From Octopus sinensis (taxonomy: Eukaryota), in the NCBI RefSeq assembly GCF_006345805.1, contig NW_021835401.1:1-40277 (forward strand): a DNA stretch of 40,277 nt, read 5' to 3'. Of the stretch, positions 15,929 to 40,277 are shown one piece after another. Each line of letters begins with the position of its first letter. The stretch's first letter is position 1. The notes beneath the pieces were generated by a model. That model searched no databases and was not told the DNA's origin. It saw only the letters and a program-made list of their open reading frames with translations. The position numbers and the translations under genes are program-made.

Positions 15929-17000
15929 CACCGCGAGTGTCGCGTTGCTCTCAAGCAACTCTGCCGTCCTGGGTCGACCTTAAGTGACTTCAACACAACC
16001 AAAGCATTCTATAGGGGTTTAGTGGAGGGGAGGTACGACGACGAGCTCGGGGCGAACCTGGACGTCGACGAGGAGTACCTGACCCGCCTGTTCAGGACGG
16101 CTTTCGGGCCAGGGCCCATGGACAACTTCCAGAGATCCCTGGCCTGGCAGTGCTACCGAGAAGCGCTAGCCGTTCGGGATAAGCTCTACAGACACGGCTC
16201 GAGAAACACGGGGCCGACCTGCCCGAGATGCAGTCAGAGCGACGAAACCGTTCTGCACGCACTCGTTCAGTGTCCAACAATTTCCGACCTGTGGGCTTAT
16301 GTCGAACAACTGCTGTCACGTGTGGGACGAGTCGGTTTATCAGCTGAGTCTATCGTCAATATTGTCACACCTCTTCCTTCAAACGGGAAGGAAGAGCTAT
16401 TTTCATCATCCTGTGCTATGGCGAAAGAATGTATCTGGTGGACGCGTCTGAAAGGATTGGAGACAAACACTTTCCTCTCTGGTCAATCTCTCATCAACTT
16501 CTTCAAGTACCACTTGAAAAGGAAAGTGAGAGTAGAGAGGCAAGTTTTGTCTAGCGAATGTTTTAAAAAAAGATGGGTGAATGTAGCAAGAATGGCACGT
16601 ATGAATGACGAAGCCACCTTGAGCATAGTCCTATGAACCCAGAAATCGAAAACAGAGAGTTGCTTATTTGCAAAAAAAAAAAAAAAAAAAATATAAAATG
16701 TGACTTCATTGACCGAGGTTACCGTGGTCTTTTCCGTAGGCTTTTCTTTCCACGGGTAAACCTCACCTGTCCTCCCCCTTTAAACTTCATATTGACATTC
16801 TGTGATAACGATCCCTATTGATCAATTTTTTTCCTCTCCCCTTTTTTAACCCCCCTTTTTTTGTCCTCTTTCTCTCCTTTTACGATCCTTTTGATCGAAA
16901 CTCCCTTTCCTTTTTTTTTTTTTTTTAAACCTTCAAAAGAAAAGCTCTACCTGTAATTTGTTCTATCTGTGTGCAGCCCTGTGTGGCTAATAAAGAAACA
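15929..17000 (+). mobile_element. Tx1 family A, copy A2 (5'-truncated, near-identical to A1)
   Basis: ORF 16022-16636 is the ORF2 C-terminus; 3'UTR matches A1; followed by (CTAT)(CTAC) at 17001-17032. Confidence 0.93.
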
Positions 17001-17032
17001 TATCTATCTATCTATCTACCTACCTACCTACC

Positions 17033-17244
17033 TTACCGTGGTCTTTTCCGTAGGCTTTTCTTTCCACGGGTAAACCTCACCTGTCCTCCCCTTTACACTT
17101 CATATTGACATTTCTGTGATAACGATCCCTATTGATCAATTTTTTTTCCTCTCCCCCTTTTTTTTTTAACCCCCCCTTTCTTTTGTCCTCTTTCCCTCCT
17201 TTTACGATCCCTTTTGATCGAAACTCCCCCTTCCTTTTTTTTTT
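17033..17244 (+). mobile_element. Isolated internal fragment of the family A 3'UTR
   Basis: Repeats TTACCGTGGTCTTTTCC...CGAAACTCCCCCTTCC(T)n of A1/A2, lacks the terminal tail and is fused to A3 ORF1. Confidence 0.88.
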
Positions 17245-18439
17245 CTGATGAACTAACGTTGACACCGAGTTACCTCGGCCAGAAGGTGACGAAAGTCATT
17301 ATCAGTGGTGTCCCCCAAGTGACTACCACACTGTGGATTACATCCGCTTTAACATCCGAAATGGAGGACTTAAACATCCTAGATATCGGTGTTTCGGAAA
17401 ACAAGGACTGGCTGGGAAAGAGAATAGAGTTCCTCTTCCACATAAGTCAAGAGGACATAAATAAAATCCCCACCCACGTACATCTTGAGGATGGCCGCAA
17501 GTTATACGTAGTAGTCGAGGGCAGAAGGCCACGATGCTATACATGTGGCAGTGAGGCACACCTCAAAAAGGAGTGCAAATCTGCCGCAAAATTACAACAA
17601 CAACAACAGCCACAGGAAAAATCACAAAAGCCAGGATTATTGCCCACACCACAATATGGACAGCTAGTCAAGAAGCTGTATGCGGAAATGCAGGAAAAAC
17701 AACAAAGAACAAGCCAACCCAACCAAACAACACCAACACCAGCGCCAAGAACAGAATCATCACCACCAACAACAAATAAACCAATTCCAACACCAAGAAT
17801 AACAACGAAGAAGACAAGTACCAAGGATGTAGGAGAGACAATAACCATAACAAACCCCCAGCAACACTCCCCGCCCACCACAACAATATCTACAACCGCA
17901 CAAACACACCCAGACGCTTTACCCTTGCCCCCTGCTGATTCGTCAGACTTTTCATCTAACGATGAAAGTTCGACAGAATGGCAAATAGCCACAGGGGGTA
18001 AAAGAAAAAGATCAAGAAAAACCAAACAAGAAATCGCAACCAAAGCAGGGAGATACCTGAACCTGAAAACTCCATACACAACAAAACAAGCACCAACACC
18101 ACAAAAACAATGCTATCAGCGATAGACACAAAAGACTCCAAACTAATGGAGTACATCACAGGATACACAAACATTTGTGAAGATGACTTTAAAAATAGCA
18201 ATCATCCACGCACTACACCACCCAAAACACATCAAAATACTACACATCACAAAAACACAACACCACAAACTCAAAGCCCTCTTCCCAAATGCTGTAGGGG
18301 TTTCCAGAAATATCTGTCCCAAAAACATATAAAAAACCTCCTCGAAGACACATCAAAGAACGAGGAAGCCAAAACTTTCGACACAAGTAAGCAGCTCTCT
18401 GTACTTTCATTTGTGTGTTTTAAAGCAACACCCCAATAG
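17245..18439 (+). pseudogene. A3 ORF1, partial
   Basis: ORFs 17214-18125 and 18110-18439 align with B ORF1 (DELTLTPSYLGQKVTKVII vs DEIIMVPYYKNQRVSRITI; DESSTEWQIATGGKRKRS). Confidence 0.85.
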
Positions 18440-18443
18440 AATC

Positions 18444-21400
18444 ATGGTCAAGATTGGTTGTGTGAATGCGCGTGGCTTGGGGTCTCCTTGGAAACAAGGA
18501 TACCTCCTAAATGACATCAAGTCACATGATTTGGGAATCATAGCCATAAGTGAGACCAGACTCCACGAGCCACGGGCCCTAAAGTCCATGTTTGGCGGAC
18601 AGTTTAACATTTATCGCTCCTGTCTGCCGAGGATGGCGGTAGTGGCACCGCGGTACTTTTTCACAAGAGCCTGGATCTCGAAGTCAAGACGATATTCGTA
18701 GACCCGGAGGGTAGACTGATCGTTCTGGATGTTGACGGCAGCAATGGGTGCGCTTTTCGACTCGTATCAGTCTACGCACCGCCCTTAAAAGGTCGGGCGG
18801 ATTTCTTTCGACGTCTAGAAGTATTCTTGGGAACGTCTCGTCCTTTACTCTTAGTGGGGGATTGGAATGCTACCTTGGACACGCATGTAGACTACGTGGG
18901 TAGAGACAGAAACAGAAGGGGAGGCAAATGCCTCAGAGACCTGCTCAGACGATTCCAACTGTCTGACAGGTACCGACTCGACCACCCAAATGCACCAACG
19001 TGGACATGGAGCAACCGCAGTGGGTCGTCGAGATCGTATCTAGATAGGATACTGTGTAGGACATAGACAAGGATAACTTAGGATGTCCACAATTCCACAC
19101 AGTCAGCTACACGGATCACAATTGGTGACGTGTACGCTAGACTTAGATAAGGCACATAGACAGGGTCCTGGGTACTGGAAACTGAACGCATCATTCCCGT
19201 CCAGACAAGTTTTCAGAGACCGGATTAGCACACTAGTAAGAGGGCTTTGACGGGAGCCATCATCAACAACAAATGGTGGTTTGCCCTCAAGAGAGCAGTA
19301 AAAGCAGAAGCGATTAGGTACAGCAAAGCACTAGCCATAGATAGAAATAGAGTAGAGGGTGAGCTAGTTAAGAAGCTAGAAGAGGCAATTAGAAGCGGCA
19401 TCGCATCCGACGTTTTGGCGGCGAGGTTGGCCCTCGACCAACACTTCAACGCAAAACACGAAGGATGTGCTGTCAGAGCTAGGATGCGTGCTCTAAGGAA
19501 CGAAGGTGTTGGAGCCGCGAGAGAGGCCCGGGTGGCAGAGGCGCAACAGGGCAACAAAACCACCATTCGGTCACTGGTAGATCAACAGGGGCGCGAATTG
19601 CTCGAGCCAAGTAAAATGTGTGAGGCCTTTCAGCAGCATTTTGCCCGACTGTTCGGGACGAGTGAGGGGCAAGAACGTAGGGTAGACTTCAGTGCCTACC
19701 TACATAGCCTGCCACGACTCTCGACAAGAAAGGCAGGGTGCTGCGAAGGTGCCATCACAGCGGCGGAAGTGCGGGAAGCGATGGCAGAATGCTCGAGGGA
19801 CAAATCACCGGGTTTGGATGGTCTACCCTACGAATTTTAATATTGTATGCCAGACTTGTTTGGAGACGTCTTGGCAGCGGTATACTGCAACTGGCAGCAA
19901 AACGGGAGCATACCCGGTTTTGTGAGTCGAGGAGTTGTAACTCTGCTGAAGAAAGATCCAAACAAGGGAAACATTATAGATAACTTTAGGCCAATCACTC
20001 TGCTCAATGCAGACCTGAAAATTTTGACAAAGGTGTTAGCCAAGAGGTTGGCGCTTGTCATGGAGAAACTGGTCGACAACGCACAAAAGTGCGCCGTGCC
20101 GGGCCGGAGCATCATGACAACCTCCATCTGATGCGCTACATCATAGACAGGGTAGTTAACGAACCTGGCATGGGTGGGGCCCTGATCAACTTGGATCAAT
20201 CGAAAGCCTTTGATAGGGTAGACCATCGATACTTGGAGGCAGTCCTGAGAGCGGCTGGTTTCGGTCCCGTCTTCCGCGGCTGGATAGCTGCCTTGTACAG
20301 GGGCATCCGTTCGGTAATCGCGTAAATGGACATCTATCGAGACCCTTCGACATTGCACGTTCGGTCCGTCAGGGATGCCCCCTCTCGGCGCTTCTATACG
20401 TATTGACTCTTGAGCCACTACTGCGGAAGCTGGCGACTCTGAGGGGCATCCCGCGAGAATTAGGATGCGGGATTAGCGTGTCTGCATACGCGGACGACGT
20501 CACCGTCATAGTGTCAAGCCACGAGCACATCGAGCGGGTCGGCGAGACACTGAAAGACTACGAAGCGGTGACAGGAGCAAAAATCAACCGGGAAAAGTCA
20601 TTGGGCTTGCGGCTCGGCACCTGGAGAAGCAAGCCCATGCCGTCCACCAGTACCTCCGTCGTGGGACGCTGGACAGACGGCCCGGTTGAGTTGCTCGGGG
20701 TCTGGTTCGGTCCGGACCTCCAAATGGAGAAGAACTGGAACGAGATAACGAGTTGGTTGGTCACTCTCGCCCAGCAATGGGCCGAGCGGAAACTGTCCCT
20801 AAAAGGTCGGGCGGAGGTGGTGAACGCGTACATCGCGTCCATCATCTACTACCGCCTGACCGTCGTACCTTGTCCCGACCCTACCATCACCAAACTAGAA
20901 CGCATCCTCTTCCGCTTCTTGTGGAAAGGATGCTTCCCGATGGTCAGGCGATCCATTTGCTGCCAACACCCGTTAAAAGGAAGGCTGGGCATGCCGTGGT
21001 TGATGATGCGCAGACACGCGCTGAGACTGCGACATCTCCGGCTCTATGTAGACGACGGTGAACAGGTGTGGTCGCCGTTTGTGAGGCACGCATTCCCGCA
21101 ACTCGTCTCCATGACCGAACTACAGTCGTGGATCAAAAAGAGGCCGAGGCAGGGCGAATGGCACCGCGCGAGTGTCGCGTTGCTCTCAAGCAACTCTGCC
21201 GTCCCGGGTCGACCTTGAGCGACTTCAACACAACCAAAGCATTCTATAGGGGATTAGTGGAGGGGAGGTACGACGACGAGCTCGGGGCAAACCTGGGCGT
21301 CGACGAGGAATACCTGACCCGCCTGTTTCAAACGACTTTCGGCCCGGACCTATGGACAACTTCCAGAGATCCCTGGCCTGGCGGTGCTACCGAGAAGCGC

Positions 21401-21873
21401 TACCCGTTCGGGATAAGCTCTATAGGCATGGCTCGAGAAACACGGGGCCGACCTGCCCGAGATGCGGGCAGAGCGACGAAACCGCTCTGCACGCAATCGT
21501 GCAGTGTCCAGCAATTTCCCACCTGTGGGCTTATGTCGAACGACTGCTGTCACGTGTGGGACGTGTCGGTTTATCAGCCGAGTCTATCGTTAATATCGTC
21601 ACGCCTCCTTCCTTCAAACGGGAAGGAAGAGCTATTTTTATCATACTTGTGGCTATGGCGAAAGAATGTATCTGGTGGACGCGTCTGAAAGGATTAGAGA
21701 CAGAACACTTTCCTCTCTGGTCAATCTCTCATCAACTTCTTCAAGTATCACTTGAAGAAAAAAGTGAGAGTAGAGAGGCAAGTTTTGTCTACGAATGTTT
21801 TAAAAAAAGATGGGTGAATGTAGCAAGGATGGCACGTATGAATGACGAAGCCACCTTGACTATGATTCTATGA
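18444..21873 (+). pseudogene. A3 ORF2 (APE-RT-zinc finger), frameshifted
   Basis: MVKIGCVNARGL, KSPGLDGLPYE, FRPITLLNADLKIL, LDQSKAFDRVDH, YADD, CPRCGQSDETALHAIVQC. Confidence 0.92.
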
Positions 21874-22248
21874 ACCGTAAAAATTAATACAGAGTTGTTG
21901 CTTATTTGCAAAAAAAAAGAAAAATAACATGACTTCATTGACCGAGGTTACCGTGGTCTTTTCCGTAGGCTTTTCTTTCCACGGGTAAACCTCACTGTTC
22001 TCCTCCCTTTACACTTCATATTGACATTTCTGTGATAACGATCCCTATTGATCAATTTTTTGCTCTCCCCCACACTTTTTTTTTATTTTTTATTTATTAA
22101 CCCCTCCATTTTTTTAGTCCTCTTTCTTTCCTTTTACGATCCCTTTTGATCGAAAACCACCACTCCCTTTTTTTTACCCCCTAAAGAAAAGCTCTACCTT
22201 GTAATTTGTTCTATCTGTGTGAAGCCCTGTGTGGCTAATAAAGAAACA

Positions 22249-22257
22249 TATCTATCC

Positions 22258-22321
<64 letters not shown>

Positions 22322-22351
22322 GCCTACCTACCTACCTACCTACCTACCTAC

Positions 22352-22382
<31 letters not shown>

Positions 22383-22485
22383 CTATCTATCTTCTACCTA
22401 CCTACCTACCTACCTACCTACCTATCTATCTATCATCTTCTCTATCTATCTATCTACCTACCTACCTACCTACCTACCTACCTAC

Positions 22486-22542
<57 letters not shown>
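22249..22542. repeat. (CTAT)n/(CTAC)n spacer between A3 and B2
   Basis: Directly visible. Confidence 0.98.
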
Positions 22543-22749
22543 CACTACGGACGTGCTATCACCTCGGCTCCCAAGGTAATCGTTTATTTTGACTATTTAT
22601 AGCCCATATTTTGTGTACATTTTTGTAAATAAGGTGTGTAAGGCACCCAACTTTCGTTTGAGTGCTTTTCCAAGGGAGGAATTCGCCCCTAGTGGCAGTT
22701 TCAACCCTATTAATTTGTGTATTTTTTTTCTTCTTCTCGACATTAAAAA

Positions 22750-24610
22750 ATGTCGAGAAATGTTATTGTAGAACGCTGGTCGCGTTCCTTTATGGACCAG
22801 CATTTTCGTAGTCTGGAAACGCTAGGAGAAAACAAGATCTTATGCACGCAAAGTGCAAACCTGAATGACGTGGTAGTGAACGCTGCAACCACTTGCGGTA
22901 ACAGCCCTGTCACCACCACCACCACCACCACCACCACTAACAACAACAACAACAACAACGAGACTACTACTGCTACCAGCACCACCTCCACCACCACCAT
23001 CACCATGACCAACATAAATGATAAAAATGAAACTCACGCGAATACTATTAACAAAAACAACAAGAACAATAATAAATATGAAATAAATATCTTACTATCT
23101 AATAGTGAAGATGTTAATATAAAAGAATCAACAACACCAGTAAATTTCGCTGACACTCTGCGTCAGAAAAAAGAAATAGTAAAATTTACGAATGAAGAGT
23201 TAATAGAAAGGAGAGCACTCTTTACAACACAAGGGCAGGATTTAGTGCTGCATACACCTCAACACATAAAGGAACAAATAGAAAATAAGACAATTATATA
23301 TAAATTATAAGAAAAAACAAAAAGCAAAATGAACAGATTACAAAGACGGATATAGAAAAGTGTTTAAAAAGCATAATTAAAAAAATATATATATATAAAC
23401 TGGGGTTCCCAGTTTAATACAGTGGTGGTCCGCTTCCCTAACCAGGAAGTGGCAAAAGCTCACTCTACAGAGTCTTTGGAAAATGATGATATCATCATGG
23501 TACCATATTACAAAGGCCAGAGAGTGAGCAGAATTAGCATTAAAAATGTACCCCCCGAGATACCTAACAAATGGATAACAGGGGCAATCTATTACCATTT
23601 GAAAAAGATAAATATATTAGAAACCGCCGCGTACAAAAACGACAGTTGGGGTGGTAAAACAATAGTAGTGACCATCCAGATTGAGGGGTCCTCTATCGAG
23701 AACTTACCTGATAGGATCCACTTAGAAAATGGGCAAAGCCTATATGTTGTAGCAGAAGGCAAAAGGCCTAGATGCTACAAATGTGGCAGCGCCAGAACAT
23801 TTAATTGCCAAGTGCACTCTGGCACAGAAAAACAAGAAAGAACAAATCAGAAAACAAATAAAAAAAAACGTTGTTGCCAACACCAACACCACACACTCAA
23901 TGCCAAGAAAAACAACAAACACCCCAACACATCACCAAGAAAAGAAGCAGTACCAACACATTCACCGTTGACGTCGCAACCAATTCAACATACTGAACCA
24001 AAAGATAGACCAACACAACACCACACCGAGGACGACAATTAAAAAGACAGAAACAGTGACGAGAAGACAAATTCTACCCCTAACAAACCACAACAACACA
24101 AACACCGCGCACAAAACATCAACAATTTCTGCAAGCATACATAGTAACGCAAATGCTTTGCCTTTACCCCCTTCTGATACGTCGGACGACGAAAGTTCGA
24201 CGGAACGGCAAATAGCCACAGGGGGTAAAAGGAAAAGATCAAAAAAGCCCACCAAACAAAGAAGTAAAGCAGGGAGATATTTAACTCCGGACAGCATCCC
24301 CCTAGACAATCAACAAATCAATGAACACGCAAAACCATACACACAACTAACTGCAATAGACACAGACAATAAAAAATTAATGGATTACGTTGCATCCAAC
24401 ACGGACATCTGTGAAGATGACTTTAAGACAAACACCACACCACCCAAACACATAAGAATTGTACACATAACACAAACACAACATTATACACAGAAAACAA
24501 TATTTCCAAATGCGGTAGGCGAGTTTCAACGATACCTCTCCAAAAAACTATACAAACACCTCATCAAAGACACCACAAAAGAAGAAGAAAATATGAAACT
24601 TTCGAAATGA
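22750..24610 (+). pseudogene. B2 ORF1, frameshifted
   Basis: ORFs 22750-23310, 23422-24042 and 24056-24610; MSRNVIVERWSRSF start; CYKCGS knuckle broken by a frameshift. Confidence 0.87.
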
Positions 24611-24684
24611 GTAAGTGACCTTCCCTCTTGCCTCTTGTCTCTTCCAATGTAGTGTGTGAAACACAATTTTCGTAAACGTCAATT

Positions 24685-27600
24685 ATGCTTAAATTAGGTT
24701 GTGTGAATGAGCGTGGCTTGGCGTCGGCTTGGAAGCAAGGTTACCTTCTAAACGACATCAAGTCACTGAACGTGGATATAGTAGCTATCAGTGAAACCAG
24801 ACTCAGCAAGCCGCGGGCTCTCGAGTCCATGTTTGGCGATCAATTTGACATTTATTTTTCTCCCTGTCTGCCGAACATGGGTGGTGGAGGTACCGCGGTG
24901 CTTTTTCGAAAGAGTCTAAATGTAAAAGTAAGAACAATATTCCTAGACCCGGAGGGTAGGCTGGTTGTCTTGGACGTGGATGGCAGAAATGGGTGTGCAT
25001 TCCGTCTGATGGCAGTTTATGCACCGTCCTTAACGGGTCGGGCGGATTTCTTCAGACGTCTAGAGGTTTTCCTGGGTACGTCTAGACCTTTACTGTTAGT
25101 AGGGGATTGAAACGCTACCTTGGACACGCATCTAGATTATGTGGGAATGGATAGGAATAGAAGGGGGTGTAAGTGCCTCAAAGACCTACTCAGACGTTTC
25201 CATTTGTCTGACAGGTTCCGACTCGAGCATCCGAACGTGCCAACGTGGACTTGGACAAACCGCGTCGGATCGTCGAGATCTTATCTAGATAGAATTTTAT
25301 GCAGGACAGAGGATAGGGATAGTGTAGGATGTCCACAATTTAAAATAGTCAGCTACACAGATCACAAATTTGTGACGTGTACGCTCGAGTTAGATAAGAC
25401 ACATAGACAGGGTCCCGGTTACTGGAAACTGAACACGTCGCTATTAGCGCGACAGGTTTACAGGAAGCGGATTAGCGAGTCAATTAAGAGGGCGCTGACG
25501 GGAGCCGTCGTTAACAACCGCTGGTGGTACGCCCTGAAAATGGCAATAAAATCGGAATCAATTAGGTTTAGCAAGGAATTAGCGATAGATCGAAATAGAG
25601 TAGAGGGAGACCTGGTTAAGAAACTAGAAGAGGCACTTACCACTGGCAGTGCAACCAACGTGCTGGCTGCGAGGATGGCCCTCGACCAACACCTCAACGC
25701 CAAGCACGGAGGTTGCGTCGTCAGAGCTAAAATGCGTGCCTTAAGGAAGGAAGGGATCGAAGCTGCGCGAGAGTCCCGGGTAGCGGAGGCGCAGCCTTGC
25801 AACAGAGACACCATTCGGTCTTTAATAGATCAACAGGGATGCAGTTTACTCGAACCCGAAAGGATGTGTGAGGCCTTTCAACAGCACTTTGCTCGACTGT
25901 TTGGTGCGAGTGGTGGGTCGGAACGTGGGATGGATTTCAGTGCCTACCTGACCGACCTGCCGCGGCTCTCGGCAAGAGAAGCGGAGTGTTGTGAAAGTCC
26001 CATCACAGCCGCTGACGTGTGGGATGCGATGGCGGGCTGCACGAGGGATAAGTCGCCTGGATTGGATGGTTTACCCTACGAGCTGTATTGTCAAATGCCA
26101 GACTTGTTTGGCGACCTCTTGGCATCAGTCTACTGCAACTGGCAACAAAACGGGAGAATCCCCGGTTTCGTGAGCCGAGGTGCAGTGACGTTGCTGAGGA
26201 AAGACCCCAACCAGGGGAATTTTATAGATTATTTCAGGCCCATCACTCTGCTCAACGCAGATTTGAAAATTTTGGCCAAAGTAATAGCCGAGAGGTTGGC
26301 GCTTGTCATTGATAAACTGGTCGACAGGGCGCAAACATGCGCCGTGCCGGGCAGAACCATACATGACAACCTCAATCTGATGCGCTACATTGTGGACAGG
26401 GTAGTTAAGGATCCTGGCATGGGTGGGGGCGATCAATTTGGATCAGTCTAAAGCCTTCGATAGGGTCGACCATCGGTACTTGGCGGCCGTCCTCAGGGCG
26501 GCTGGCTTCGGTTCCGTCTTCCGCGGTTGGATCGCTGCCTTGTATAGCGGCATCCGATCGGTGATTTGGGTGAACGGTCACCTGTCGAAACCGTTTGACA
26601 TCACACGTTCGGTCCGTCAGGGGTGTCCCCTGTCGGCGCTTCGGTATGTATTGACTCTCGAGCCGCTACTACGGAAGCTGGCGACACTGAGGGTCATCCC
26701 ACGGGAACTGGGTTGCGGGACGAGCGTGTCGGCATATGCGGACGATGTCACCGTCATAGTGTCGAGCGACAAACACATCCAGATGATAGGCGAGACACTA
26801 AGAAAATACGAAACGGTGACGGGAGCGAAGATTAACCCGGAAAAGTCAGTGGGTTTGCTACTCGGCACCTGGAGAAGCAAGCCCATGCCATCCGACTGCC
26901 GCTCAGTAGTGGGACGCTGGACGGACGGACCGGTTAAATTGCTCGGGGTCTGGTTCAGTCCGGACCTCCAAATGGATAAGAACTGGGACGAGATCATGAG
27001 TAGAGTGGTCGCTCTCAGCCAAACATGGGCCGAGAGAAAGCTGTCTCTAAAAGGCCGGGCGGAGGTGGCGAACGCGTACATCACATCCGTCATCGATTAC
27101 CGCCTGACCGTCGTACCTTGTCCCGACTCCACCATCACCAAACTGGAACGCATACTCTTCCGCTTCCTGTGGAAGGGTGGCGTTCCGATGGTGAGGAAGT
27201 CCATTTGCTGTCAACATCCGTTGAATGGAGGACTGGGCATGCCGTGGTTGATGATGCGCAGGCATGCGCTGAGACTGTGGCATCTCTGGAACTTCATCGA
27301 CGACGGTGAACAGGTGTGGGCGCCATTTGTGAGGCGCCTCTTCCCGCAACTCGTCCCCCTGACCGAACTGCAAACGTGGATCAAAAAGAGACCGAAATTG
27401 GGCGATTGGCACCGAGAGTGTCGCCAAGCTCTACAGCAGCTCTGCCGACCGGGGTCAAACTTGTGCAACTTACAAACGACTAAAGCGTTCTATAGAGGAC
27501 TAGTGGAGGGGAGGTCCGACGACACACTCGGGGCAAACCTGGGCGTCAACGAGAAATTCCTAACCCGCCTGTTCAGGACGACGTTCGGGCCGGGGCCTAT

Positions 27601-28105
27601 GGATAACTTCCAGAAATCCCTGGCTTGGCAGTGCTATCGAGACGCACTACCCGTTCGAGAGAAGAGCTACAGGCATGGTTCGAAAACCATCACCGGACCG
27701 ACCTGCCCGAGATGCGGTCAGAGCGACGAAACCGTTCTGCACGCACTCGTGCAGTGTCCAGATATTTCAGAGCTGTGGTCCTTCGTCGAACAGCTGTTGT
27801 CACGTGTAGGTCAGGCTCGCCTATCGGCCGAGTCTATCTGTCATATTGTTCCGCCACCTTCCTTTAACGGGAAGGGAAAACGGTTTTCGTTACGCTGATG
27901 GCTATGGCGAAAGAATGTGTGTGTGGACGCGTTTGAAAGGACTGCAAACAAACACCTTCCTCTCTGGTCAGTCTCTCGTCAACTTTTTCAAGTACCACTT
28001 GAAAAGGAGGATGAGAATAGAGAGGAAGGCTTTGTCGAACGAATGTTTTAATAAAAAGTGGGTAAAAGTGGCAAAGACGACACTATTTCAAGCATAAATC
28101 TGTAA
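24685..28105 (+). pseudogene. B2 ORF2 (APE-RT-zinc finger); in-frame TGA at ~25108 plus frameshifts
   Basis: ORFs 24685-25110, 25120-26451, 26423-27898 and 27846-28097 contain all APE, RT and CCHC motifs. Confidence 0.94.
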
Positions 28106-28415
28106 CGAAAAGAGACAACGAGAAGTAAGGCGACTTGCTCATGTGTTCTTTTTCGAATTGTCTGAGGTGACCTTGGTCTTTTTTGTAGGTTTTTCTTTCC
28201 AAGGCTACACCTAAACTGTGAACCTTATATATATATTATATATATATAATATATATATTATTTGCTTTTTTATACACCACACAACCCACAGATCCCTATT
28301 GATCAAACGTTGTTTTTTTTGTGCCCCACACATCCCACCTCGAAAAGAAAAAATTCTACATTGTACTTCGTCCATTTTTATTTTGTGTTTAGCCCTGTGT
28401 GGCTACAATAAAAAG

Positions 28416-28416
<1 letters not shown>

Positions 28417-28447
<31 letters not shown>

Positions 28448-29335: not shown

Positions 29336-30003
29336 CTCTCTGTGTCACGCTGAATATCCCCGAGAACTACGTTAAGGGTACACGTGTCTGTGGAGTGCTC
29401 AGCCACTTACACGTTAATTCCACGAGCAGGCTGTTCCGTTGATTCGGATCAACTGGAACCCTCATCGTCGTAACCGACGGAGTGCTCCGGCAGGGAGTGG
29501 TGGTGATCCCTGCTGTACTCTTTCACCACAACTTTCTCTCACTCTTACTTCCTGTTTCTGTTGTACCTGTATTTCAAAGGGCCGGCCTTGTCACTCTCTG
29601 TGTCACGCTGAATATCCCCGAGAACTACGTTAATGGTACACGTGTCTGCGGAGTACTCAGCCACTTACACGTTAATTTCACGAGCAGGCTGTTCCATTGA
29701 TTCGGATCAACTGGAACCCTCATCGTCGTAACCGACAGTGCTCCTGCAGGGGATGGTGGTGAACCCTGCTGTACTCTTTCACCACAACTGTCTCTCACTC
29801 TTACTTCCTGTTTCTGTTGTACCTGTATTTCAAAGGGCCGGCCTTGTCACTCTCTGTGTCACGCTGAATATCCCCGAGAACTACGTTAAGGGTACACGTG
29901 TCTGTGGAGTACTCAGCCACTTACACGTTAATTCCACGAGCAGGCTGTTCCGTTGATTCGGATCAACCGGATCCCTCATCGTCGTAACCGACGGAGTGCT
30001 TCC
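29336..30003 (+). repeat. Headless tandem array of SINE family S4 (one partial plus two ~257-bp units)
   Basis: Units start at 29336 (partial), 29489 and 29745; followed by ATAAACAGGAGCAA (30004-30017). Confidence 0.85.
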
Positions 30004-31386: not shown

Positions 31387-31546
31387 GGAGTGGCTGTGTG
31401 ATAAGTAGCTTGCTAACCAACCACATGGTTCCGGGTTCAGTCCCACTGCGTGGCATCTTGGGCAAGTGTCTTCTACTATAGCCCCGGGCACACCAACGCC
31501 TTGTGAGTGGATTTGGTAGACGGAAACTGAAAGAAGCCTGTCGTAC

Positions 31547-31625
<79 letters not shown>

Positions 31626-32166
31626 ATATAATATAGGCGCAGGAGTGGCTGTGTGGTAAGTAGCTTGCTAACCAACCACATGGTTGCGGGTTCAGTCCCA
31701 CTGCGTGGCATCTTGGGCAAGTGTCTTCTGCTATAGCCCCGGGCCGACCAATACCTTGTGAGTGGAATTGGTAGACGGAAACTGAAAGAAGCCTGTCGTA
31801 TATATGTATATATATATAGGCGCAGGAGTGGCTGTGGTAAGTAGCTTGCTAACCAACCACATGGTTCCGGGTTCAGTGCCACTGCGTGGCACCTTGGGCA
31901 TGTGTCTTCTACTATAGCCTCGGGCCGACCAATGCCGTGTGAGTGGATTTGGTAGACGGAAACTGAAAGAAGCCCATCATATATATATATATATAGGCAT
32001 AGGAGTGGCTGTGTGGTAAGTAGCTTGCTAACCAACCACATGGTTCCGGGTTCAGTCCCACTGCGTGGCACCTTGGGCAAGTGTCTTCTACTATAGCCCC
32101 GGGCCGACCAATGCCGTGTGAGTGGATTTGGTAGACGGAAACTGAAAGAAGCCCGTCGTATATATG

Positions 32167-32199
<33 letters not shown>

Positions 32200-33478: not shown

Positions 33479-33935
33479 TACAAAGAAACAGGAAGTAAGA
33501 GTGAGAGAAAGTTGTGGTGAAAGAGTACAGCAGGGTTCACCACCACCCCACCACCATGGAGCACTCCGTCGGTTACGACGATGAGAGTCCCAGCTGATAC
33601 GATCAACGGAACAGCCTGCTCGTGGAATTAACGTGCAAGTGGCTGAGTACTCCCACACACGTGTACCCTTAACGTAGTTCGCGGGGATATTCAGCGTGAC
33701 ACAGAAGAGTGACAAGGCCGGCCCTTTGAAATACAGTACAACAGAAACAGGAAGTAAGAGTGAGAGAAAGTTGTGGCGAAGAGTACAGCAGGTTCACCAC
33801 CATCCCCTGCCGGAGCCTCGTGGAGCTTTAGGTGTTTTTCGCTCAATAAACACTCACAACGCCCGTCTGTTAATCGAAACCGCGATCCTATGACCGCGAG
33901 TCCGCTGCCCTAACCACTGGGCCATTGCGCCTCCA
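33479..33935 (-). mobile_element. SINE S4: complete headed unit plus a partial second unit
   Basis: tRNA-like head TGGAGGCGCAATGGCCCAGTGGTTAGGGCAGCGG...GGTTTCGATT; body matches 29489-30003; preceded on the minus strand by ATAAACAGGAGCAA (33949-33936). Confidence 0.85.
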
Positions 33936-34031: not shown

Positions 34032-35570
34032 AGGCGGCGAGCTTGCAGAAACGTTAGCACGCCGGGCGAAATTCTTAGCGGTATTTCGTCTGCCGTTACG
34101 TTCTGAGTTCAAATTCCGCCGAGGTCAACTTTGCCTTTCATCCTTTCGGGGTCGATTAAATAAGTACCAGTCACGCACTGGGGGTTGATATAATCGCCTT
34201 AATCCGTTTGTCTGTCCTTGTTTGTCCCCTCTGTGTTTAGCCCCTTGTGGGTAGTAAAGAAATAGGTATTTTGTCTGCCGCTACGTTCTGAGTTCAAATT
34301 CCGCCGAGGTCAACTTTTATCTTTCATCTTTTCGGGGTCGATTAAATAAGTACCAGTCACGCACTGGGGGTTGATATAATCGAATTAATCCGTTTGTCTG
34401 TCCTTCTTTGTCCCCTCTGTGTTTAGACCCTTGTGGGTAGTAAAGAAATAGGTATTTCGTCTGTCGTTACGTTCAGAGTTCAAATTCCGCCGTGGTCAAC
34501 TTTGCCTTTCATCCTTTCGGGGTCGATTAAATAAGTACCAGTTACGCACTGGGGTCGATGTAATCGACTTAATCCCTTTGTCTGTCCTTGTTTGTCCTCT
34601 CTGTGTTTAGCCCCTTGTGGGTAGTAAAGAAATAGAAATAGGTATTTCGTCTGCTGTTACGTCCTGAGTTCAAATCCGCCGAGATCGACTTTGCCTTTCA
34701 TCCTTCAGGGTCGATTAAATAAGTACCAGTTACCCACTGGGGTCGATATAATCGACTTAATCCCTTTGTCTGTCTTTGTTTGTCACCTCTGTGTTTAGCC
34801 CCTTGTGGGTAGTAAAGAAATAGGTATTTCTTCTGCCGTTAAATGTTCTGGGTTCAAATTCCGCCGATGTCGACTTTGCCTTTCATCCTTTCGGGGTCGA
34901 TAAATTAAGTACCAGTTACGCACTGGGGTTGATGTAATCGACTTAAACCATTTGTCTGTCCTTGTTTGTCCTCTCTGTGTTTAGCCCCTTCTGGTAGTAA
35001 AGAAATAGGTATTTCGTCTGCTGTTACGTCCTGATTCACATTCCTTCCGCCGAGGTCGACTTTGCCTTTCATCCTTTCGGGGTTGGTTAAATAAAGTACC
35101 AGTTACGCACTGGGGTCGATGTAATCGACTTAATCCGTTTGTCTGTCCTTGTTTGTCCCCTCTGTGTTTAGCCCCTTGTGGGTAGTAAAGAAATAGGTAT
35201 TTCGTCTGCCGTTAGTGTTCTGGGTTCAATTTCTGCCGAGGTCGACTTTGCCTTTCATCCTTTCGGGGTTGATTAAATAAAGTACCAGTTACGCACTGGG
35301 GTCGATGTAATCGACTTATTATCCCTTTGTCTGTCCTTGTTTTGTCCCCTCTGTGTTTAGCCTTGTGGGTAGTAAATAAATAGGTATTTCGTTCTGCTGT
35401 TAGTCGTCCTGAGTTCAAATTCTGCCGAGGTCGACTTTGCCTTTCATTTCATCCTTCGGTCAATTAATAAGTACCAGTTACGCACTGGGGTTGATGTAAT
35501 CGACTTAATCCGTTTGTCTGTCCTTGTTTGTCCCCTCTGTGTTTAGCCCCTTGTGGGTAGTAAAGAAATA
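34032..35570 (+). repeat. Tandem array of SINE S1 (tail type 2): one tRNA head plus eight ~182-190-bp body-tail units
   Basis: Head AGGCGGCGAGCTTGCAGAAACGTTAG; units start at 34081, 34266, 34452, 34642, 34824, 35009, 35197 and 35384, each ending GTGGGTAGTAAAGAAATA(G). Confidence 0.92.
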
Positions 35571-37111: not shown

Positions 37112-37152
<41 letters not shown>

Positions 37153-37323
37153 GCACTCAGTACACTCTTGGAGTGGTTGGCGTTAGGAAGGGCATCCAGC
37201 TGTAGAAACCTGCAGATCAGACTGGGGCCTGGTGCAGCCTTCTGGCATCCCAGATCCCCGGTCGAACCGTCCAACCCACGCTAGCATGGAAAGCGGACGT
37301 TAAACGATGATATGATGATATAA

Positions 37324-37368
<45 letters not shown>

Positions 37369-37727
37369 GCACCCCTACACTCACGAGTGGTTGGCGTTAG
37401 GAAGGGCTTCCAGCTGTAGAACACTGCCAGATCTGACTGGGGCCTGGTGCAGCCTTCTGGCATCCCAGATCCCTGGTCGAACCGTCCAACCCACGCTAGC
37501 ACGGAAAGCGGACGTTAAACGATGATATGATGATATATATATATATATATATATTACATATGTAGCACCCCTACACTCACGGAGTGGTTGGCGTTAGGAA
37601 GGGCTTCCAGCTGTAGAAACACTGCCAGATCTGACTGGGGCCTGGTGCAGCCTTCTGGCATCCCAGACCCTGGTCGAACCGTCCAACCCATGCTAGCATG
37701 GAAAACGGACGTTAAACGATGATACGA

Positions 37728-37770
<43 letters not shown>

Positions 37771-37925
37771 GCACCCCTACACTCACGGAGTGGTTGGCGT
37801 TAGGAAGGGCATCCAGCTGTAGAAACACTGCTAGATCAGACTGGAGCCTGGTGCTGCCTCCTGGCTTCCCAAACCTCAGTCAAACCGTCTAACCTTTGCT
37901 ATCATGGAAAACGTACGTTAAACGA

Positions 37926-37993
<68 letters not shown>

Positions 37994-38160
37994 AGCACTC
38001 ACTACACTCTTGGAGTGGTTGGCGTTAGGAAGGGCATCCAGCTGTAGAAACACTGCCAGATCAGACTGGGTCTTGGTGCAGCCTTCTGGCATCCCAGATC
38101 CCCGGTCGAACCGTCCACCCACGCTAGCATGGAAAGCGGACGTTAAACGATGATATGATG

Positions 38161-38195
<35 letters not shown>

Positions 38196-38365
38196 ATATG
38201 TAGCACCCCTACACTCACGGAGTGGTTGGCGTTAGGAAGGGCTTCCAGCTGTAGAAACACTGCCAGATCTGACTGGGGCCTGGTGCAGCCTTCTGGCATC
38301 CCAGACCCTGGTCGAACCGTCCAACCCACGCTAGCATGGAAGCGGACGTTAACAATGATATGATG

Positions 38366-38446
<81 letters not shown>

Positions 38447-38613
38447 GCACCCCTACACTCACGGATTGGTTGGCGTTAGGAAGGGCTTCCATCTGTAGAA
38501 ACACTGCCAGATCTGACTGGGGCCTGGTGCAGCCTTCTGGCATCCCAGACCCTGGTCGAACCGTCCAAACTATGCTAGCATGGAAAACGGACGTTAAACG
38601 ATGATATGAATAT

Positions 38614-38661
<48 letters not shown>

Positions 38662-38826
38662 GTATGTATATAGCACCCACTACACTCACGGAGTGGTTGG
38701 CGTTAGGAGGGCATCCAGCTGTAGAAACACTGCCAGATCACACTGGGGCCTGGGCAGCCTCCTCCTGGCTTCCAAAACCTCAGTCGAACCGTCCAACCCG
38801 TGCTAGCACGAAAACGGACATTAAAC
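36783..38826 (+). repeat. Tandem array of ten SINE-derived (family S3) ~165-bp units separated by (TA)n
   Basis: Unit ATGTAGCACCCCTACACTCACGGAGTGGTTGGCGTTAGGAAGGGC...GGACGTTAAACGATGAT; starts at ~36783 (internally deleted), 36956, 37148, 37363, 37560, 37766, 37990, 38197, 38442 and 38670. Confidence 0.9.
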
Positions 38827-38884
38827 GATGATGATGATGATGATGATGGTGAGGTGATGGTGATGGTTAATAATAATAATGATG

Positions 38885-39456: not shown

Positions 39457-40277
39457 TATTTCTTTACTACCCACAAGGGGCTAAACACAGAGGGGACAAA
39501 CAAGGACAGACAAAGGGATTAAGTCGATTACATCGACCCCAGTGCGAAACTGGTACTTAATTTATCGACCCCGAAAGGATGAAGGCAAAGTGGACCTCGG
39601 CGGAATTTGAACCCGAACACTTAACGGCAGACGAAATACTTATTTCTTTACTACCCACAAGGGGCTAACACACAGAGGGGACAAACAAGGACAGACAAGG
39701 GATTAAGTCGATTACATCGACCCCAGTGCGTAACTGGTACTTAATTTATCGACCCCGAAAGGATGAAAGGCAAAGTGGACCTCGGCGGAATTTGAACCCA
39801 GAACACTTAACGGCAGACGAAATACCTATTTCTTTACTACCCACAAGGGGCTAAACACAGAGGGGACAAACAAGGACAGACAAACGGATTAAGTCGATTA
39901 CATAGACCCCAGTGCGTAACTGGTACTTAATTATCGACCCCGAAATGAAAGGCAAAGTCGACCTCGGCAGAATTTGAACCCAGAACACTTAACGGCAGAC
40001 GAAATACCTATTTCTTTACTACCCACAAGGGGCTAAACACAGAGGGGACAAACAAGGACAGACAAACGGATTAAGTCGATTAAATAGAACCCAGTGCGTA
40101 ACTGGTACTTATTATCGACCCCGAAAGGATGAAAGGCAAAGTCGACCTCGGCTGAATTTGAACCCAGAATAGTTAAAGGCAGACGAATACCTATTTCTTT
40201 ACTACCCACAAGGGGCAAACACAGAGGGGACAAACAAGGACAGACAAAGGGATTAGTCGATTACATCGACCCCAGTG
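39457..40277 (-). repeat. Second tandem array of SINE S1 (tail type 2), at least 4.5 units, continuing past the window end
   Basis: Reverse complement of the 34081-type units; unit 3' ends at 39457, 39641, 39827, 40009 and 40192. Confidence 0.92.

What the first reader, a model, noticed from the sequence alone, without database searches (positions are those of the whole stretch)
34230..34264. SINE S1 tail matches the Tx1 3' end: candidate LINE-SINE partnership
Seen: the SINE terminal 35 nt TCTGTGTTTAGCCCCTTGTGGGTAGTAAAGAAATA match the family A terminus TCTGTGTGCAGCCCTGTGTGGCTAATAAAGAAACA (16966-17000) at 28/35 positions without gaps. They match family B TCTGTGTTTAGCCC (15423-15436) at 14/14. 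Both are at the extreme 3' end. Known: many SINEs borrow the 3' tail of the LINE that mobilises them (e.g. eel UnaSINE1/UnaL2). Inference: this SINE is, or was, retrotransposed by these Tx1 enzymes. Tx1-dependent SINEs are rarely reported.
Basis: partly seen in the sequence, partly recalled or inferred. Interest (0 to 1): 0.8.

Follow-up and report, generated by a model that had tools for sequence, protein, structure and literature searches.

The report
Octopod SINE tail copied from Tx1-type LINE
The last ~40 bases of a short non-coding repeat (SINE) in this octopus-like genome are a copy of the conserved 3' end of a neighbouring family of Tx1-type LINE retrotransposons, the usual sign that the SINE borrows that LINE's enzymes to spread; the principle is textbook, but I found no earlier report of a tail-sharing pair for the Tx1 group or for octopod SINEs.

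Summary
Window 34230-34264 matches the LINE family A terminus at 28/35 and family B at 14/14 (24-25/35 over the full length). The only other hits of at least 24/35 in the window are the SINE's own copies and the termini of all five LINE copies. Shuffles never exceed 22/35 in the same register.

The LINEs have an endonuclease, a reverse transcriptase and a zf-RVT zinc finger. Their closest solved structure is human L1 ORF2p. Their fish relatives sit inside U2 snRNA genes, like the Tx1-clade element Keno. All five copies lie head-to-tail in one (TATC)n microsatellite. That is a Tx1-type, target-specific LINE.

The terminal ~30 nt is the best conserved part of the 3'UTR across LINE subfamilies and species. 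In Argonauta hians, two or more SINE types with unrelated heads carry it. They match that species' own LINE tail at 33/37, and some copies have target-site duplications.

The partnership with this LINE lineage is therefore well supported. The exact partner of S1 is not settled. Family A is only 80% identical, an Argonauta (ATT)n-type relative matches as well or better, and S1 here is not in (TATC)n. The local S1 copies are 186-bp tandem units that probably grew at the DNA level.

Verdict: a new member of a known kind, of moderate interest.

The parts
34230..34264 (+). The finding: the 3'-terminal LINE-like module of the first, full-length S1 copy
   Evidence: 28/35 to the LINE A terminus and 14/14 to LINE B. 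A local alignment extends the match to S1 positions 189-230.
34033..34264 (+). Full-length S1 SINE copy (232 nt). It has a head with box-B-like GAGTTCAAATTCC, a shared body, and the LINE-like tail.
   Evidence: The head is about 76% identical to the S3 family heads at 871 and 5441. ARAGORN and Rfam find no tRNA.
34265..35570 (+). Seven tandem 186-bp units equal to S1 positions 48-232. Each ends with the tail, and the array ends ...AAAGAAATA|ATATATAC.
   Evidence: Pairwise identity is 89-96%.
39457..40277 (-). Second, inverted array of the same 186-bp units (about 4.5 units, running off the window). Its 3' end is ...AAAGAAATA|TATATAAAC.
7995..9525 (+). LINE family A, 5'-truncated copy. Its tail is at 9491-9525.
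9575..15457 (+). LINE family B, full-length copy with broken reading frames. Its tail is at 15423-15457.
   Evidence: 90% identical to 22543-28416.
15929..17000 (+). LINE family A, 5'-truncated copy.
17033..22248 (+). LINE family A, long copy with ORF1 (CCHC knuckle) and ORF2. Its tail is at 22214-22248. Its first ~210 nt duplicate part of the family's 3'UTR.
22543..28416 (+). LINE family B, full-length copy (5.87 kb): ORF1 with a CCHC knuckle, then APE, RT and zf-RVT in three frame-shifted pieces. Its tail is at 28382-28416.
7724..7990 (+). (TATC)n microsatellite upstream of the first LINE, with no LINE tail before it. This is the target microsatellite. Further stretches lie at 9528-9572, 15458-15928, 17001-17032, 22249-22542 and 28417-28447.
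5441..5653 (+). S3, a second SINE family with a head and body related to S1. It is embedded in (ATT)n, and its tail ..CCAGGCCTTGTGCTTATAATAGAAATG resembles the tails of the (ATT)n-type LINE relatives.
   Evidence: Alignment to the L002 tail is weak, z = 3.7. Match to the L015 LINE tail is 31/47.
871..1083 (+). S3, second copy, immediately followed by the 4.3-kb (TTA/ATT)n array.

Best explanation
Window 34230-34264 is the LINE-derived 3' tail of a tRNA-type SINE (S1).

What the sequence shows:
- The tail is homologous to the conserved 3' terminus, roughly TCTGTGT..RGCC-loop-GGCTAATAAAGAAA, of an octopod lineage of Tx1-type LINEs. These belong to the L1 superfamily, have an ORF1 with a CCHC knuckle and an ORF2 with APE + RT + zf-RVT, and insert into microsatellites.
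- The module is kept at the very end of every LINE subfamily examined while the rest of the 3'UTR diverges.
- Unrelated SINE heads have acquired the module repeatedly.

What I infer, by analogy with the 'stringent' LINE/SINE pairs such as UnaL2/UnaSINE1:
- The LINE's ORF2 protein recognises this terminal RNA module, probably a short interrupted hairpin, to start target-primed reverse transcription.
- A pol III SINE transcript ending in the same module is copied in trans.

Families A and B in the window belong to the partner lineage, but S1's own partner may be a sister subfamily. Apart from the first full-length copy, the local S1 copies are 186-bp tandem units that most likely multiplied by unequal exchange or replication slippage after insertion.
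For: 1. The match is real and terminal in both elements. Identity is 28/35, or 33/42 when extended (z = 9.2). The only hits in the window are the five LINE termini. Shuffles reach at most 22/35 in register.

2. The LINE is Tx1-type. It has Exo_endo_phos, RVT_1 and zf-RVT domains. Human L1 ORF2p scores 77 bits against 49 for R2. The fish relatives P0089 and P0109 score 183 and 169 bits, and their 3' ends abut U2 snRNA (Rfam U2, E 1e-19 to 1e-24), as Keno's do (PMC4494074). Five of five copies lie head-to-tail in (TATC)n.

3. The module is under constraint in the LINE. In an alignment of eight 3'UTRs from the window, Argonauta and a JGI contig, the terminal ~30 columns are the most conserved: 0.84, against 0.15-0.66 for most of the UTR. 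Relatives with 63-73% protein identity keep the module.

4. An independent replicate exists in Argonauta hians. SINE and LINE tails align over 70 columns (z = 14.4), and 33/37 of the last bases match. That is better than any cross-species pairing, so tail and LINE match by species. Two or more SINE types with unrelated heads carry the tail there, about 15 copies in 43 kb. Some copies have 13-15-bp or longer target-site duplications, so they are genuine retro-insertions.

5. The second SINE family, S3, sits in (ATT)n, and the LINE relatives L002 and L015 end in (ATT)n with a similar tail. This suggests subfamily-specific pairing.

6. Ages are comparable. S1 units are 89-97% identical pairwise, and LINE copies within a family are 93-99% identical.
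Against: - No functional test exists, so recognition of the tail by the RT is inferred.
- The hairpin is weak. Folding z-scores are -0.3 to -1.9 for most tails. Only the Argonauta SINE tails reach -2.5 and -3.1. RNAalifold gives no consensus structure on the MAFFT alignment.
- S1 is only 80% identical to family A and 70% to family B.
- S1 does not sit in (TATC)n.
- S1 in this window shows no target-site duplication and no dispersed copies, only arrays.
- The SINE head is not recognised as a tRNA by ARAGORN or Rfam.
- I could not survey the other LINE clades of this genome (RTE, CR1, Dong-R4, L2), so a better tail match elsewhere is not formally excluded.
- Placement in the Tx1 clade rests on relatives and architecture, not on a phylogeny with reference Tx1 elements.
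Confidence: 0.75

Rival explanations
1. The lineage is right but the partner is wrong. S1 is mobilised by a sister subfamily of the same Tx1-type lineage, for example an (ATT)n- or (TA)n-associated one that is absent from this window, and not by families A or B.
For: - S1's tail matches the Argonauta L015 (ATT)n-type LINE at 29/37 (36/46 over the longer stretch, including the upstream GTCCCCTCT). It matches window family A at 28/36 and B at 25/36.
- S1 ends in ..GAAATA, as L015 does.
- The S1 arrays are followed by TA-rich sequence, not (TATC)n.
- In Argonauta the true pair reaches 33/37, which shows how close a current partner can be.
Against: - The best-matching LINE comes from another species.
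- The differences between candidates are only 1-3 bases.
- No such subfamily has been seen in the source genome.
Confidence: 0.45
2. The S1 copies in this window are a SINE-derived satellite. The tail is a passive relic, and the 186-bp units spread by unequal crossing-over or slippage, not by LINE enzymes.
For: - Twelve units all start at the same internal position (S1 position 48), in two arrays in inverted orientation.
- No flanking target-site duplication is present.
- Identity within and between arrays is 89-99%.
- Other SINE-like repeats in the window also form tandem arrays.
Against: - This explains the local copy number only, not why the unit ends in a LINE terminus.
- In Argonauta the same tail is carried by dispersed copies with target-site duplications.
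- Complete SINE copies in direct tandem there (L015, about 5040-5360) are compatible with repeated insertion next to an existing tail.
Confidence: 0.6
3. The direction is reversed. The LINEs captured their terminus from a SINE, for example by template switching, so the similarity says nothing about recognition.
For: Template switching between LINE and SINE RNAs is documented in general (discussed in PMC4824008). LINE copy A3 carries an odd 5' duplication of its own 3'UTR, which shows that such rearrangements occur here.
Against: - The module is present at the terminus of every LINE subfamily sampled: A, B, two or three in Argonauta, and the JGI contigs at 63-73% protein identity. A GGGCCTTGTGACC-like motif also lies near the 3' end of a 44%-identical relative.
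- The SINE families carrying the module have unrelated heads.
- The simplest history is therefore an old LINE feature acquired several times by SINEs.
Confidence: 0.05
4. The resemblance is chance or compositional, for example a shared AATAAA-type polyadenylation signal plus a T/G-rich context.
For: Part of the shared block is AATAAAGAAA in the LINE and AGTAAAGAAA in S1, which resembles a poly(A) signal. The family B match alone is marginal.
Against: The shuffle and binomial controls, the exact terminal register in five of five LINE copies, and the 70-column alignment in Argonauta with z = 14.4.
Confidence: 0.01

Closest known systems
Stringent-type SINE/LINE pairs with a common 3' tail (eel UnaSINE1/UnaL2; tortoise Pol III SINE/CR1; Bov-tA/Bov-B; tobacco TS/RTE), reviewed in PMC3747384
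   Same: A SINE with a tRNA-like head ends in about 40-70 nt copied from the extreme 3' end of a LINE in the same genome. The LINE tail is the conserved part of its 3'UTR. A small stem-loop is predicted. Both elements end in short repeats.
   Different: The LINE belongs to the Tx1 group of the L1 superfamily, not to L2, CR1 or RTE. The text I read of the 2013 survey of 58 pairs mentions Tx1 only when describing LINE phylogeny, never as a SINE partner (I saw only the first rows of its Table 1). The LINE is also target-specific for microsatellites.
SINEU / Tx1-Mar in crocodilians (Kojima 2015, PMC4494074)
   Same: Non-autonomous short retroposons proposed to be mobilised by Tx1-clade LINEs. The target preference of the LINE is shared by the SINE. 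Here that is suggested for S3 and the (ATT)n-type LINEs.
   Different: SINEU has snRNA-derived heads and poly(A) tails. The link was inferred from shared insertion sites and shared 5' heads, not from a shared 3' tail. Here the head is tRNA-like and the link is a shared 3' terminus.
Microsatellite-specific Tx1-clade LINEs (Kibi (TC)n, Koshi (TTC)n, crocodilian (TTCC)n/(TTTC)n families) and U2-specific Keno (as summarised in PMC4494074)
   Same: The architecture is APE + RT + zinc finger. Copies form head-to-tail arrays in one microsatellite. The nearest vertebrate relatives found here are Keno-like elements inside U2 genes.
   Different: The target repeats here are (TATC)n and, in relatives, (ATT)n. 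I did not find these listed as targets. The host is a cephalopod. No SINE partner was described for Kibi or Koshi in the papers I read.
L1-clade stringent lineages in plants and algae (maize/sorghum L1 with ZmSINE-type SINEs; Chlamydomonas L1-1_CR/SINEX-3_CR; PMC3747384, PMC3472496)
   Same: These are members of the L1 superfamily that, unlike mammalian L1, share a specific ~50-80-nt 3' end with SINEs, with a hairpin.
   Different: They are plant or algal L1 proper, they end in poly(A), and they are not target-specific.

Membership tests
Tx1 clade of non-LTR retrotransposons (LINE families A and B) | ORF2 with an N-terminal apurinic-type endonuclease, an RT, and a C-terminal Cys/His zinc-binding motif, as in the L1 superfamily | tested here: met
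   Pfam gives Exo_endo_phos (E 1e-8), RVT_1 (E 1e-19) and zf-RVT (E 4e-6). The best solved structure is human L1 ORF2p (E 7e-21), ahead of R2 (3e-12).
Tx1 clade of non-LTR retrotransposons (LINE families A and B) | Sequence-specific insertion into a multicopy gene, transposon or microsatellite | tested here: met
   Five of five copies lie in the same orientation, each flanked by (TATC)n. The first (TATC)n stretch has no LINE tail before it. The relatives L002 and L015 end in (ATT)n.
Tx1 clade of non-LTR retrotransposons (LINE families A and B) | The RT groups with reference Tx1 elements (Xenopus Tx1, Keno, Kibi, Koshi) and not with L1 proper | tested here: inconclusive
   No reference sequences were available and no tree was built. 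Indirect evidence: the fish relatives P0089 and P0109 (183 and 169 bits, against 77 bits for human L1) are inserted in U2 snRNA genes, as Keno is. Octopus repeat surveys list L1-Tx1 as the only L1-like LINE type (PMC13282606, PMC8967140).
SINE (S1) | Pol III promoter head derived from tRNA, 7SL or 5S RNA | tested here: inconclusive
   ARAGORN finds no tRNA and Rfam has no hit at E <= 1. By eye there are only a box-B-like GAGTTCAAATTCC and a box-A-like TAGCACGCCGG. The 157-bp Argonauta SINE has a much more tRNA-like head.
SINE (S1) | Short, non-coding, and present as dispersed copies flanked by target-site duplications | tested here: inconclusive
   S1 is 232 nt. In the window it occurs only as one full copy plus two tandem arrays, with no target-site duplication. 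The homologous Argonauta SINE is dispersed, with duplications of 13-15 bp or more. The metagenome scan for more S1 copies found only chance bacterial hits.
Stringent-type SINE/LINE pair | The SINE's 3' end is homologous to the extreme 3' end of a LINE in the same genome | tested here: met
   Identity is 28/35 (33/42 extended), terminal in both elements, z = 9.2, and shuffles reach at most 22/35. In Argonauta it is 33/37, with 70 aligned columns and z = 14.4.
Stringent-type SINE/LINE pair | A conserved 3' stem-loop supported by compensatory changes | tested here: inconclusive
   The same hairpin topology is predicted in all 17 tails, with a core GCC/GGC stem and flanking pairs that vary (A-U, G-U, G-C). 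Energies are not better than shuffles for most tails. RNAalifold gives no consensus structure.
Stringent-type SINE/LINE pair | The same terminal repeats or the same target as the partner LINE | tested here: not met
   This applies to S1 against families A and B. The LINEs end in (TATC)n. The S1 arrays end ..GAAATA followed by ATATATA or TATATAA. The feature is met in Argonauta, where both end ..GAAATCTAT(T), and it is suggested for S3 with the (ATT)n LINEs.
Stringent-type SINE/LINE pair | Tail-dependent trans-mobilisation by the LINE's proteins | not testable with these tools
   This needs a retrotransposition assay.

The most novel reading that the evidence does not exclude
Octopod Tx1-type LINEs use stringent, tail-specific RNA recognition, which has not been described for the Tx1 group. 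On this reading they drive a large share of the octopod-specific SINE expansion. Each LINE subfamily would pass both its tail variant and its microsatellite target, (TATC)n or (ATT)n, to its own SINE families. Because each inserted tail recreates the target, LINEs and SINEs would pile up head-to-tail. That would explain the frequent tandem SINE and LINE arrays and would link retrotransposition to microsatellite and satellite growth in these genomes.
Probability: 0.3. Interest if true: 0.65.

Novelty: new member of a known kind. Interest (0 to 1): 0.5.

Why it matters
SINEs are among the largest components of octopus genomes (11.6% of O. vulgaris, PMC13282606), and their expansion is specific to octopuses (PMC8967140). 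None of the papers I could search names the LINE that moves them.

A tail shared with Tx1-type LINEs gives a concrete candidate driver that can be tested. It would also add the Tx1 group to the LINE clades that recognise a specific 3' RNA element. That bears on the open question of whether stringent recognition is ancestral in the L1 superfamily (PMC3747384).

It would further allow a target-specific LINE and its SINE parasites to be studied together, including how they seed microsatellite-linked tandem arrays.

Tried and rejected
1. Metagenome scan for more S1 copies with the tail TTGTGGGTAGTAAAGAAAT. It gave 8 hits, all unrelated bacterial coding sequence.

2. tRNA origin of the S1 head. ARAGORN found nothing, and Rfam at E <= 1 found nothing.

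3. Consensus structure of the tail. RNAalifold on the MAFFT alignment A2 predicts no pairs. Single-sequence folds share one topology but are mostly no more stable than shuffles. The hairpin is therefore reported as an inference only.

4. Naming the LINE clade from database names. The hits carry only 'hypothetical protein' or 'reverse transcriptase domain' names. I rejected this route and used the genomic context of the fish relatives (U2 insertion) instead.

5. P0004 could not be located on any contig. L003 and L014 end before the LINE tail.

6. SINEBase supplementary sequences, needed to see whether S1 equals the published octopus SINEs OK, OR1 or OR2, are not held. The octopus genome paper is not held either.

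7. S3 against the L002 tail is only z = 3.7, and the S3a copy gives nothing. The pairing of S3 with the (ATT)n LINEs is therefore kept as a suggestion.

8. I looked for microhomology that could explain the fixed 5' truncation of the 186-bp units. The only shared string, GAAAT, is in the wrong place, so I rejected that explanation.
Full report
**1. The observation**

Window 34230-34264 (TCTGTGTTTAGCCCCTTGTGGGTAGTAAAGAAATA) is exactly as described. It matches 16966-17000 at 28/35 without gaps. Its first 14 bases equal 15423-15436.

I scanned both strands of the whole 40-kb window for ungapped matches of at least 24/35. The only hits are the SINE's own repeat units and five other sites: 9491, 15423, 16966, 22214 and 28382. 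Each of these is the last 35 nt of one LINE copy, immediately before a (TATC)n run.

The binomial expectation for at least 28/35 anywhere in the window is 3e-6. With the register fixed, 100,000 mononucleotide shuffles reached at most 21/35 and 20,000 dinucleotide shuffles at most 22/35. The best hit anywhere in the window for 300 dinucleotide shuffles was 24/35. A local alignment extends the similarity to 33/42 ungapped, ending 2 nt from the end of both elements, z = 9.2.

The family B match alone (24-25/35) would be marginal. It counts because it lies in the exact terminal register.

**2. What the LINEs are**

BLAST of the longest copy against the window shows five copies, all on the + strand:

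| Copy | Coordinates | State |
|---|---|---|
| A1 | 7995-9525 | 5'-truncated |
| B1 | 9575-15457 | full length |
| A2 | 15929-17000 | 5'-truncated |
| A3 | 17033-22248 | long copy |
| B2 | 22543-28416 | full length, 5.87 kb |

- Every copy is bracketed by (TATC)n. The first (TATC)n stretch, 7724-7990, has no LINE tail in front of it. The microsatellite is therefore the target, not merely a tail carried by the element.
- The reading frames are broken in all copies.
- ORF1 carries one CCHC knuckle, for example CYKCGSPEHLIAKC.
- ORF2 carries Exo_endo_phos, RVT_1 and zf-RVT.
- The closest solved structure is human L1 ORF2p (77 bits, E 7e-21), ahead of R2 proteins (49 bits).
- The closest proteins in the large database are a JGI metagenome contig (73% identity) and Argonauta hians (63%). 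Further away are cuttlefish and teleost proteins. The window therefore comes from an octopod.
- I fetched two teleost relatives from Aldrovandia affinis, P0089 and P0109 (183 and 169 bits). Their 3' poly(A) ends run directly into U2 snRNA sequence (Rfam RF00004, E 3e-24 and 4.5e-19), and the next copy starts after the first ~30 nt of U2. That is the defining behaviour of Keno, a U2-specific Tx1-clade element (PMC4494074).

Architecture, target specificity and Keno-like nearest relatives together make 'Tx1-type' a well-supported label. Published octopus repeat surveys also list L1-Tx1 as the only L1-like LINE type (PMC13282606, PMC8967140). I built no tree with reference Tx1 sequences, so formal clade membership remains inconclusive.

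**3. What the SINE is**

A full-length S1 copy (232 nt) lies at 34033-34264. It is followed, without spacer, by seven 186-bp units equal to S1 positions 48-232, up to 35570. A second array of the same units lies inverted at 40277-39457.

- No tRNA is detected in the head by ARAGORN or Rfam. Only box-A-like and box-B-like motifs are visible.
- A related family, S3 (head and body about 76% identical), occurs at 871-1083 and 5441-5653, with a partial copy at 645-785. The first two copies are embedded in (ATT)n.
- Because all 12 partial units begin at the same internal base, and no target-site duplication flanks the arrays, the local copy number is best explained by DNA-level tandem amplification. 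The retrotransposed ancestor was a single S1 insertion.

**4. Evidence from elsewhere**

The Argonauta hians loci L001 and L015, and the JGI and ENA contigs L002 and L013, hold related LINE 3' ends. All carry the same terminal module:

| Locus | Terminal sequence and what follows |
|---|---|
| L001 | ...TCTGTGTCGGCCCTTGTGGCTAATAAAGAAATC, then TAT.. |
| L015 | ...GTCCCCTCTATGTTTTTGCCCTTGTGGCTAATAAAAGAAATA, then (ATT)n |
| L002 | ...GGGCCCTTGTGGCCAATAAAAGAAATC, then (ATT)n |

In an alignment of eight 3'UTRs, the terminal ~30 columns are the most conserved (0.84, against 0.15-0.66 for most of the UTR). A second conserved block lies just after the stop codon.

The Argonauta loci also contain about 15 SINE copies ending in this module:
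- a long family whose body is about 71% identical to S1;
- a 157-bp family with a clearly tRNA-like, unrelated head, with three complete copies in direct tandem after an (ATT)n run (L015, about 5040-5360);
- at least one further variant.

Several copies have target-site duplications. Examples are CTATTTCAAGGAA at L001 13620-13759(-), TATTATCTTTnTGCC at 2803-2948(-), and an imperfect duplication of about 24 nt at the copy ending at L015 15229.

The Argonauta SINE and LINE tails align over 70 columns (z = 14.4). In the last ~37 nt they match 33/37, against 26-29/37 for pairings with LINE tails from other sources. Both end ..GAAATCTAT. Tail and LINE therefore match by species. That is what an ongoing dependence predicts, and what a frozen ancient similarity does not.

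**5. Which LINE moves S1?**

Over the last ~36 nt, S1 matches family A at 28/36, family B at 25/36, Argonauta L001b at 26/36 and Argonauta L015 at 29/37. Over 45 nt, L015 gives 36/46 against 34/45 for A, and shares the upstream GTCCCCTCT. S1 ends in ..GAAATA, like L015, and is not followed by (TATC)n.

S3 sits in (ATT)n and its tail weakly resembles the (ATT)n-type LINE tails (z = 3.7; 31/47).

My reading is that the partnership is with the lineage, and that individual SINE families pair with individual LINE subfamilies.

**6. Mechanism**

Shown:
- homology of the termini;
- selective conservation of the terminus in the LINE;
- acquisition of the terminus by SINE types with unrelated heads;
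- target-site duplications on the Argonauta SINE copies;
- microsatellite-specific, head-to-tail LINE insertion.

Inferred:
- the ORF2 protein recognises the terminal RNA module to start target-primed reverse transcription, as in UnaL2/UnaSINE1 and other stringent pairs (PMC3747384);
- the module folds into a short interrupted hairpin, with TCT/AGA and TGT/AYA arms around a GCC/GGC stem and a 5-6-nt loop.

The same topology is predicted for all 17 tails. Stability is not better than shuffles for most of them, with z from -0.3 to -1.9. Only the Argonauta SINE tails reach -2.5 and -3.1. RNAalifold finds no consensus on the MAFFT alignment. The structure is therefore a hypothesis.

It is also an inference that an inserted tail plus its short terminal repeat recreates the target. 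That would explain the head-to-tail LINE array here and the tandem complete SINEs in Argonauta.

**7. Comparison with what is known, and novelty**

SINE/LINE tail sharing is textbook.
- In the 2013 survey of 58 pairs, the text I read mentions Tx1 only in the description of LINE phylogeny, never as a SINE partner. I saw only the first rows of its Table 1 (PMC3747384).
- Tx1 does not occur at all in the main text of SINEBase (PMC3531059) or of Kojima 2018 (PMC5786205).
- The one Tx1-dependent SINE group I found, SINEU with Tx1-Mar in crocodilians, was inferred from shared targets and has poly(A) tails (PMC4494074).
- The octopus repeat papers I could read list abundant SINEs and L1-Tx1 LINEs but name no partner (PMC13282606, PMC8967140, PMC9115989).
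Prior annotation of this tail there cannot be excluded.

I rate it a new member of a known kind. It is of moderate interest because it names a candidate driver of the octopod SINE expansion and would extend stringent 3'-end recognition to the Tx1 group.

**8. Limits**

- Only about 40 kb of the source genome and about 43 kb of Argonauta were available.
- The metagenome scan for S1 yielded only chance hits.
- No other LINE clade of the genome could be compared.
- There is no phylogeny and no experiment.

Noticed in passing
window 7724-28447: Five Tx1-type LINE copies from two families (82% identical to each other in the last 1 kb) lie head-to-tail in one (TATC)n microsatellite. All are in the same orientation and three are 5'-truncated or rearranged. 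This is a nest of repeated target-specific insertions.
   Followed up: yes
window 34080-35570 and 39457-40277 (minus strand): S1 forms two inverted tandem arrays of a 186-bp unit that always starts at S1 position 48. The unit junction GAAATA-GG-TATTTC is a perfect 6-nt inverted repeat, so the two ends of a unit are complementary. The mechanism behind the fixed truncation is unexplained.
   Followed up: partly
window 17033-17244 versus 16719-16920: The long family A copy begins with a ~210-nt duplicate of an internal part of the family's own 3'UTR, joined directly to the 5' region and ORF1. This is either a natural 5'UTR/3'UTR repeat or a template-switch chimera.
   Followed up: partly
window 16708-16770, 9202-9263, 28157-28219: A second block is conserved between families A and B and is visible in the cross-species 3'UTR alignment. 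It lies shortly downstream of the ORF2 stop codon and contains complementary arms ACCGTGG...CCACGGGT. It may be another structured RNA element.
   Followed up: no
window 871-1083, 5441-5653, 645-785, 1082-5441: A second SINE family (S3), related to S1, is embedded in (ATT)n next to a 4.3-kb (TTA)n array. The LINE relatives from Argonauta (L015) and a JGI contig (L002) end in (ATT)n with a similar tail. This suggests subfamily-specific SINE/LINE/microsatellite trios.
   Followed up: partly
window 29336-30000 (inverted copy about 33480-33800), 31390-32180, 37114-38841: Three other SINE-like repeats, with units of 256, 179 and 206-244 bp, also form tandem arrays. Two of them have units separated by (TA)n. 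Tandem SINE arrays seem to be a general habit of this genome. The tails of these repeats do not resemble the Tx1-type tail.
   Followed up: no
L015 about 5040-5360 (Argonauta hians, BAAFZT010000007.1): Three complete copies of a 157-bp SINE lie in direct tandem just after an (ATT)n run. The SINE has a tRNA-like head fused almost directly to the LINE tail. This is compatible with repeated insertion next to an existing tail.
   Followed up: partly
L016 and L017 (Aldrovandia affinis, JAINUG010000960.1 and JAINUG010001020.1): Keno-like Tx1 LINEs are inserted in tandemly repeated U2 snRNA genes that are flanked by (TG)n/(GTGA)n. This confirms with Rfam that the fish relatives of the octopod LINE are U2-specific.
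   Followed up: yes
protein P0004; JGI samples 3300045642, 3300037598, 3300045673: A protein 63% identical to the octopod LINE ORF2 is deposited as 'MAG: zinc-binding domain-containing protein [Herbaspirillum sp.]'. Several JGI metagenome contigs also carry close LINE relatives. These are probably cephalopod host DNA in metagenome bins.
   Followed up: no
L001 2803-2948 (minus strand), 5' junction: One Argonauta SINE insertion has about 10 extra G residues (ATGGGGGGGGGGAC) between the target-site duplication and the SINE's 5' end. This may be untemplated addition at the end of reverse transcription.
   Followed up: no
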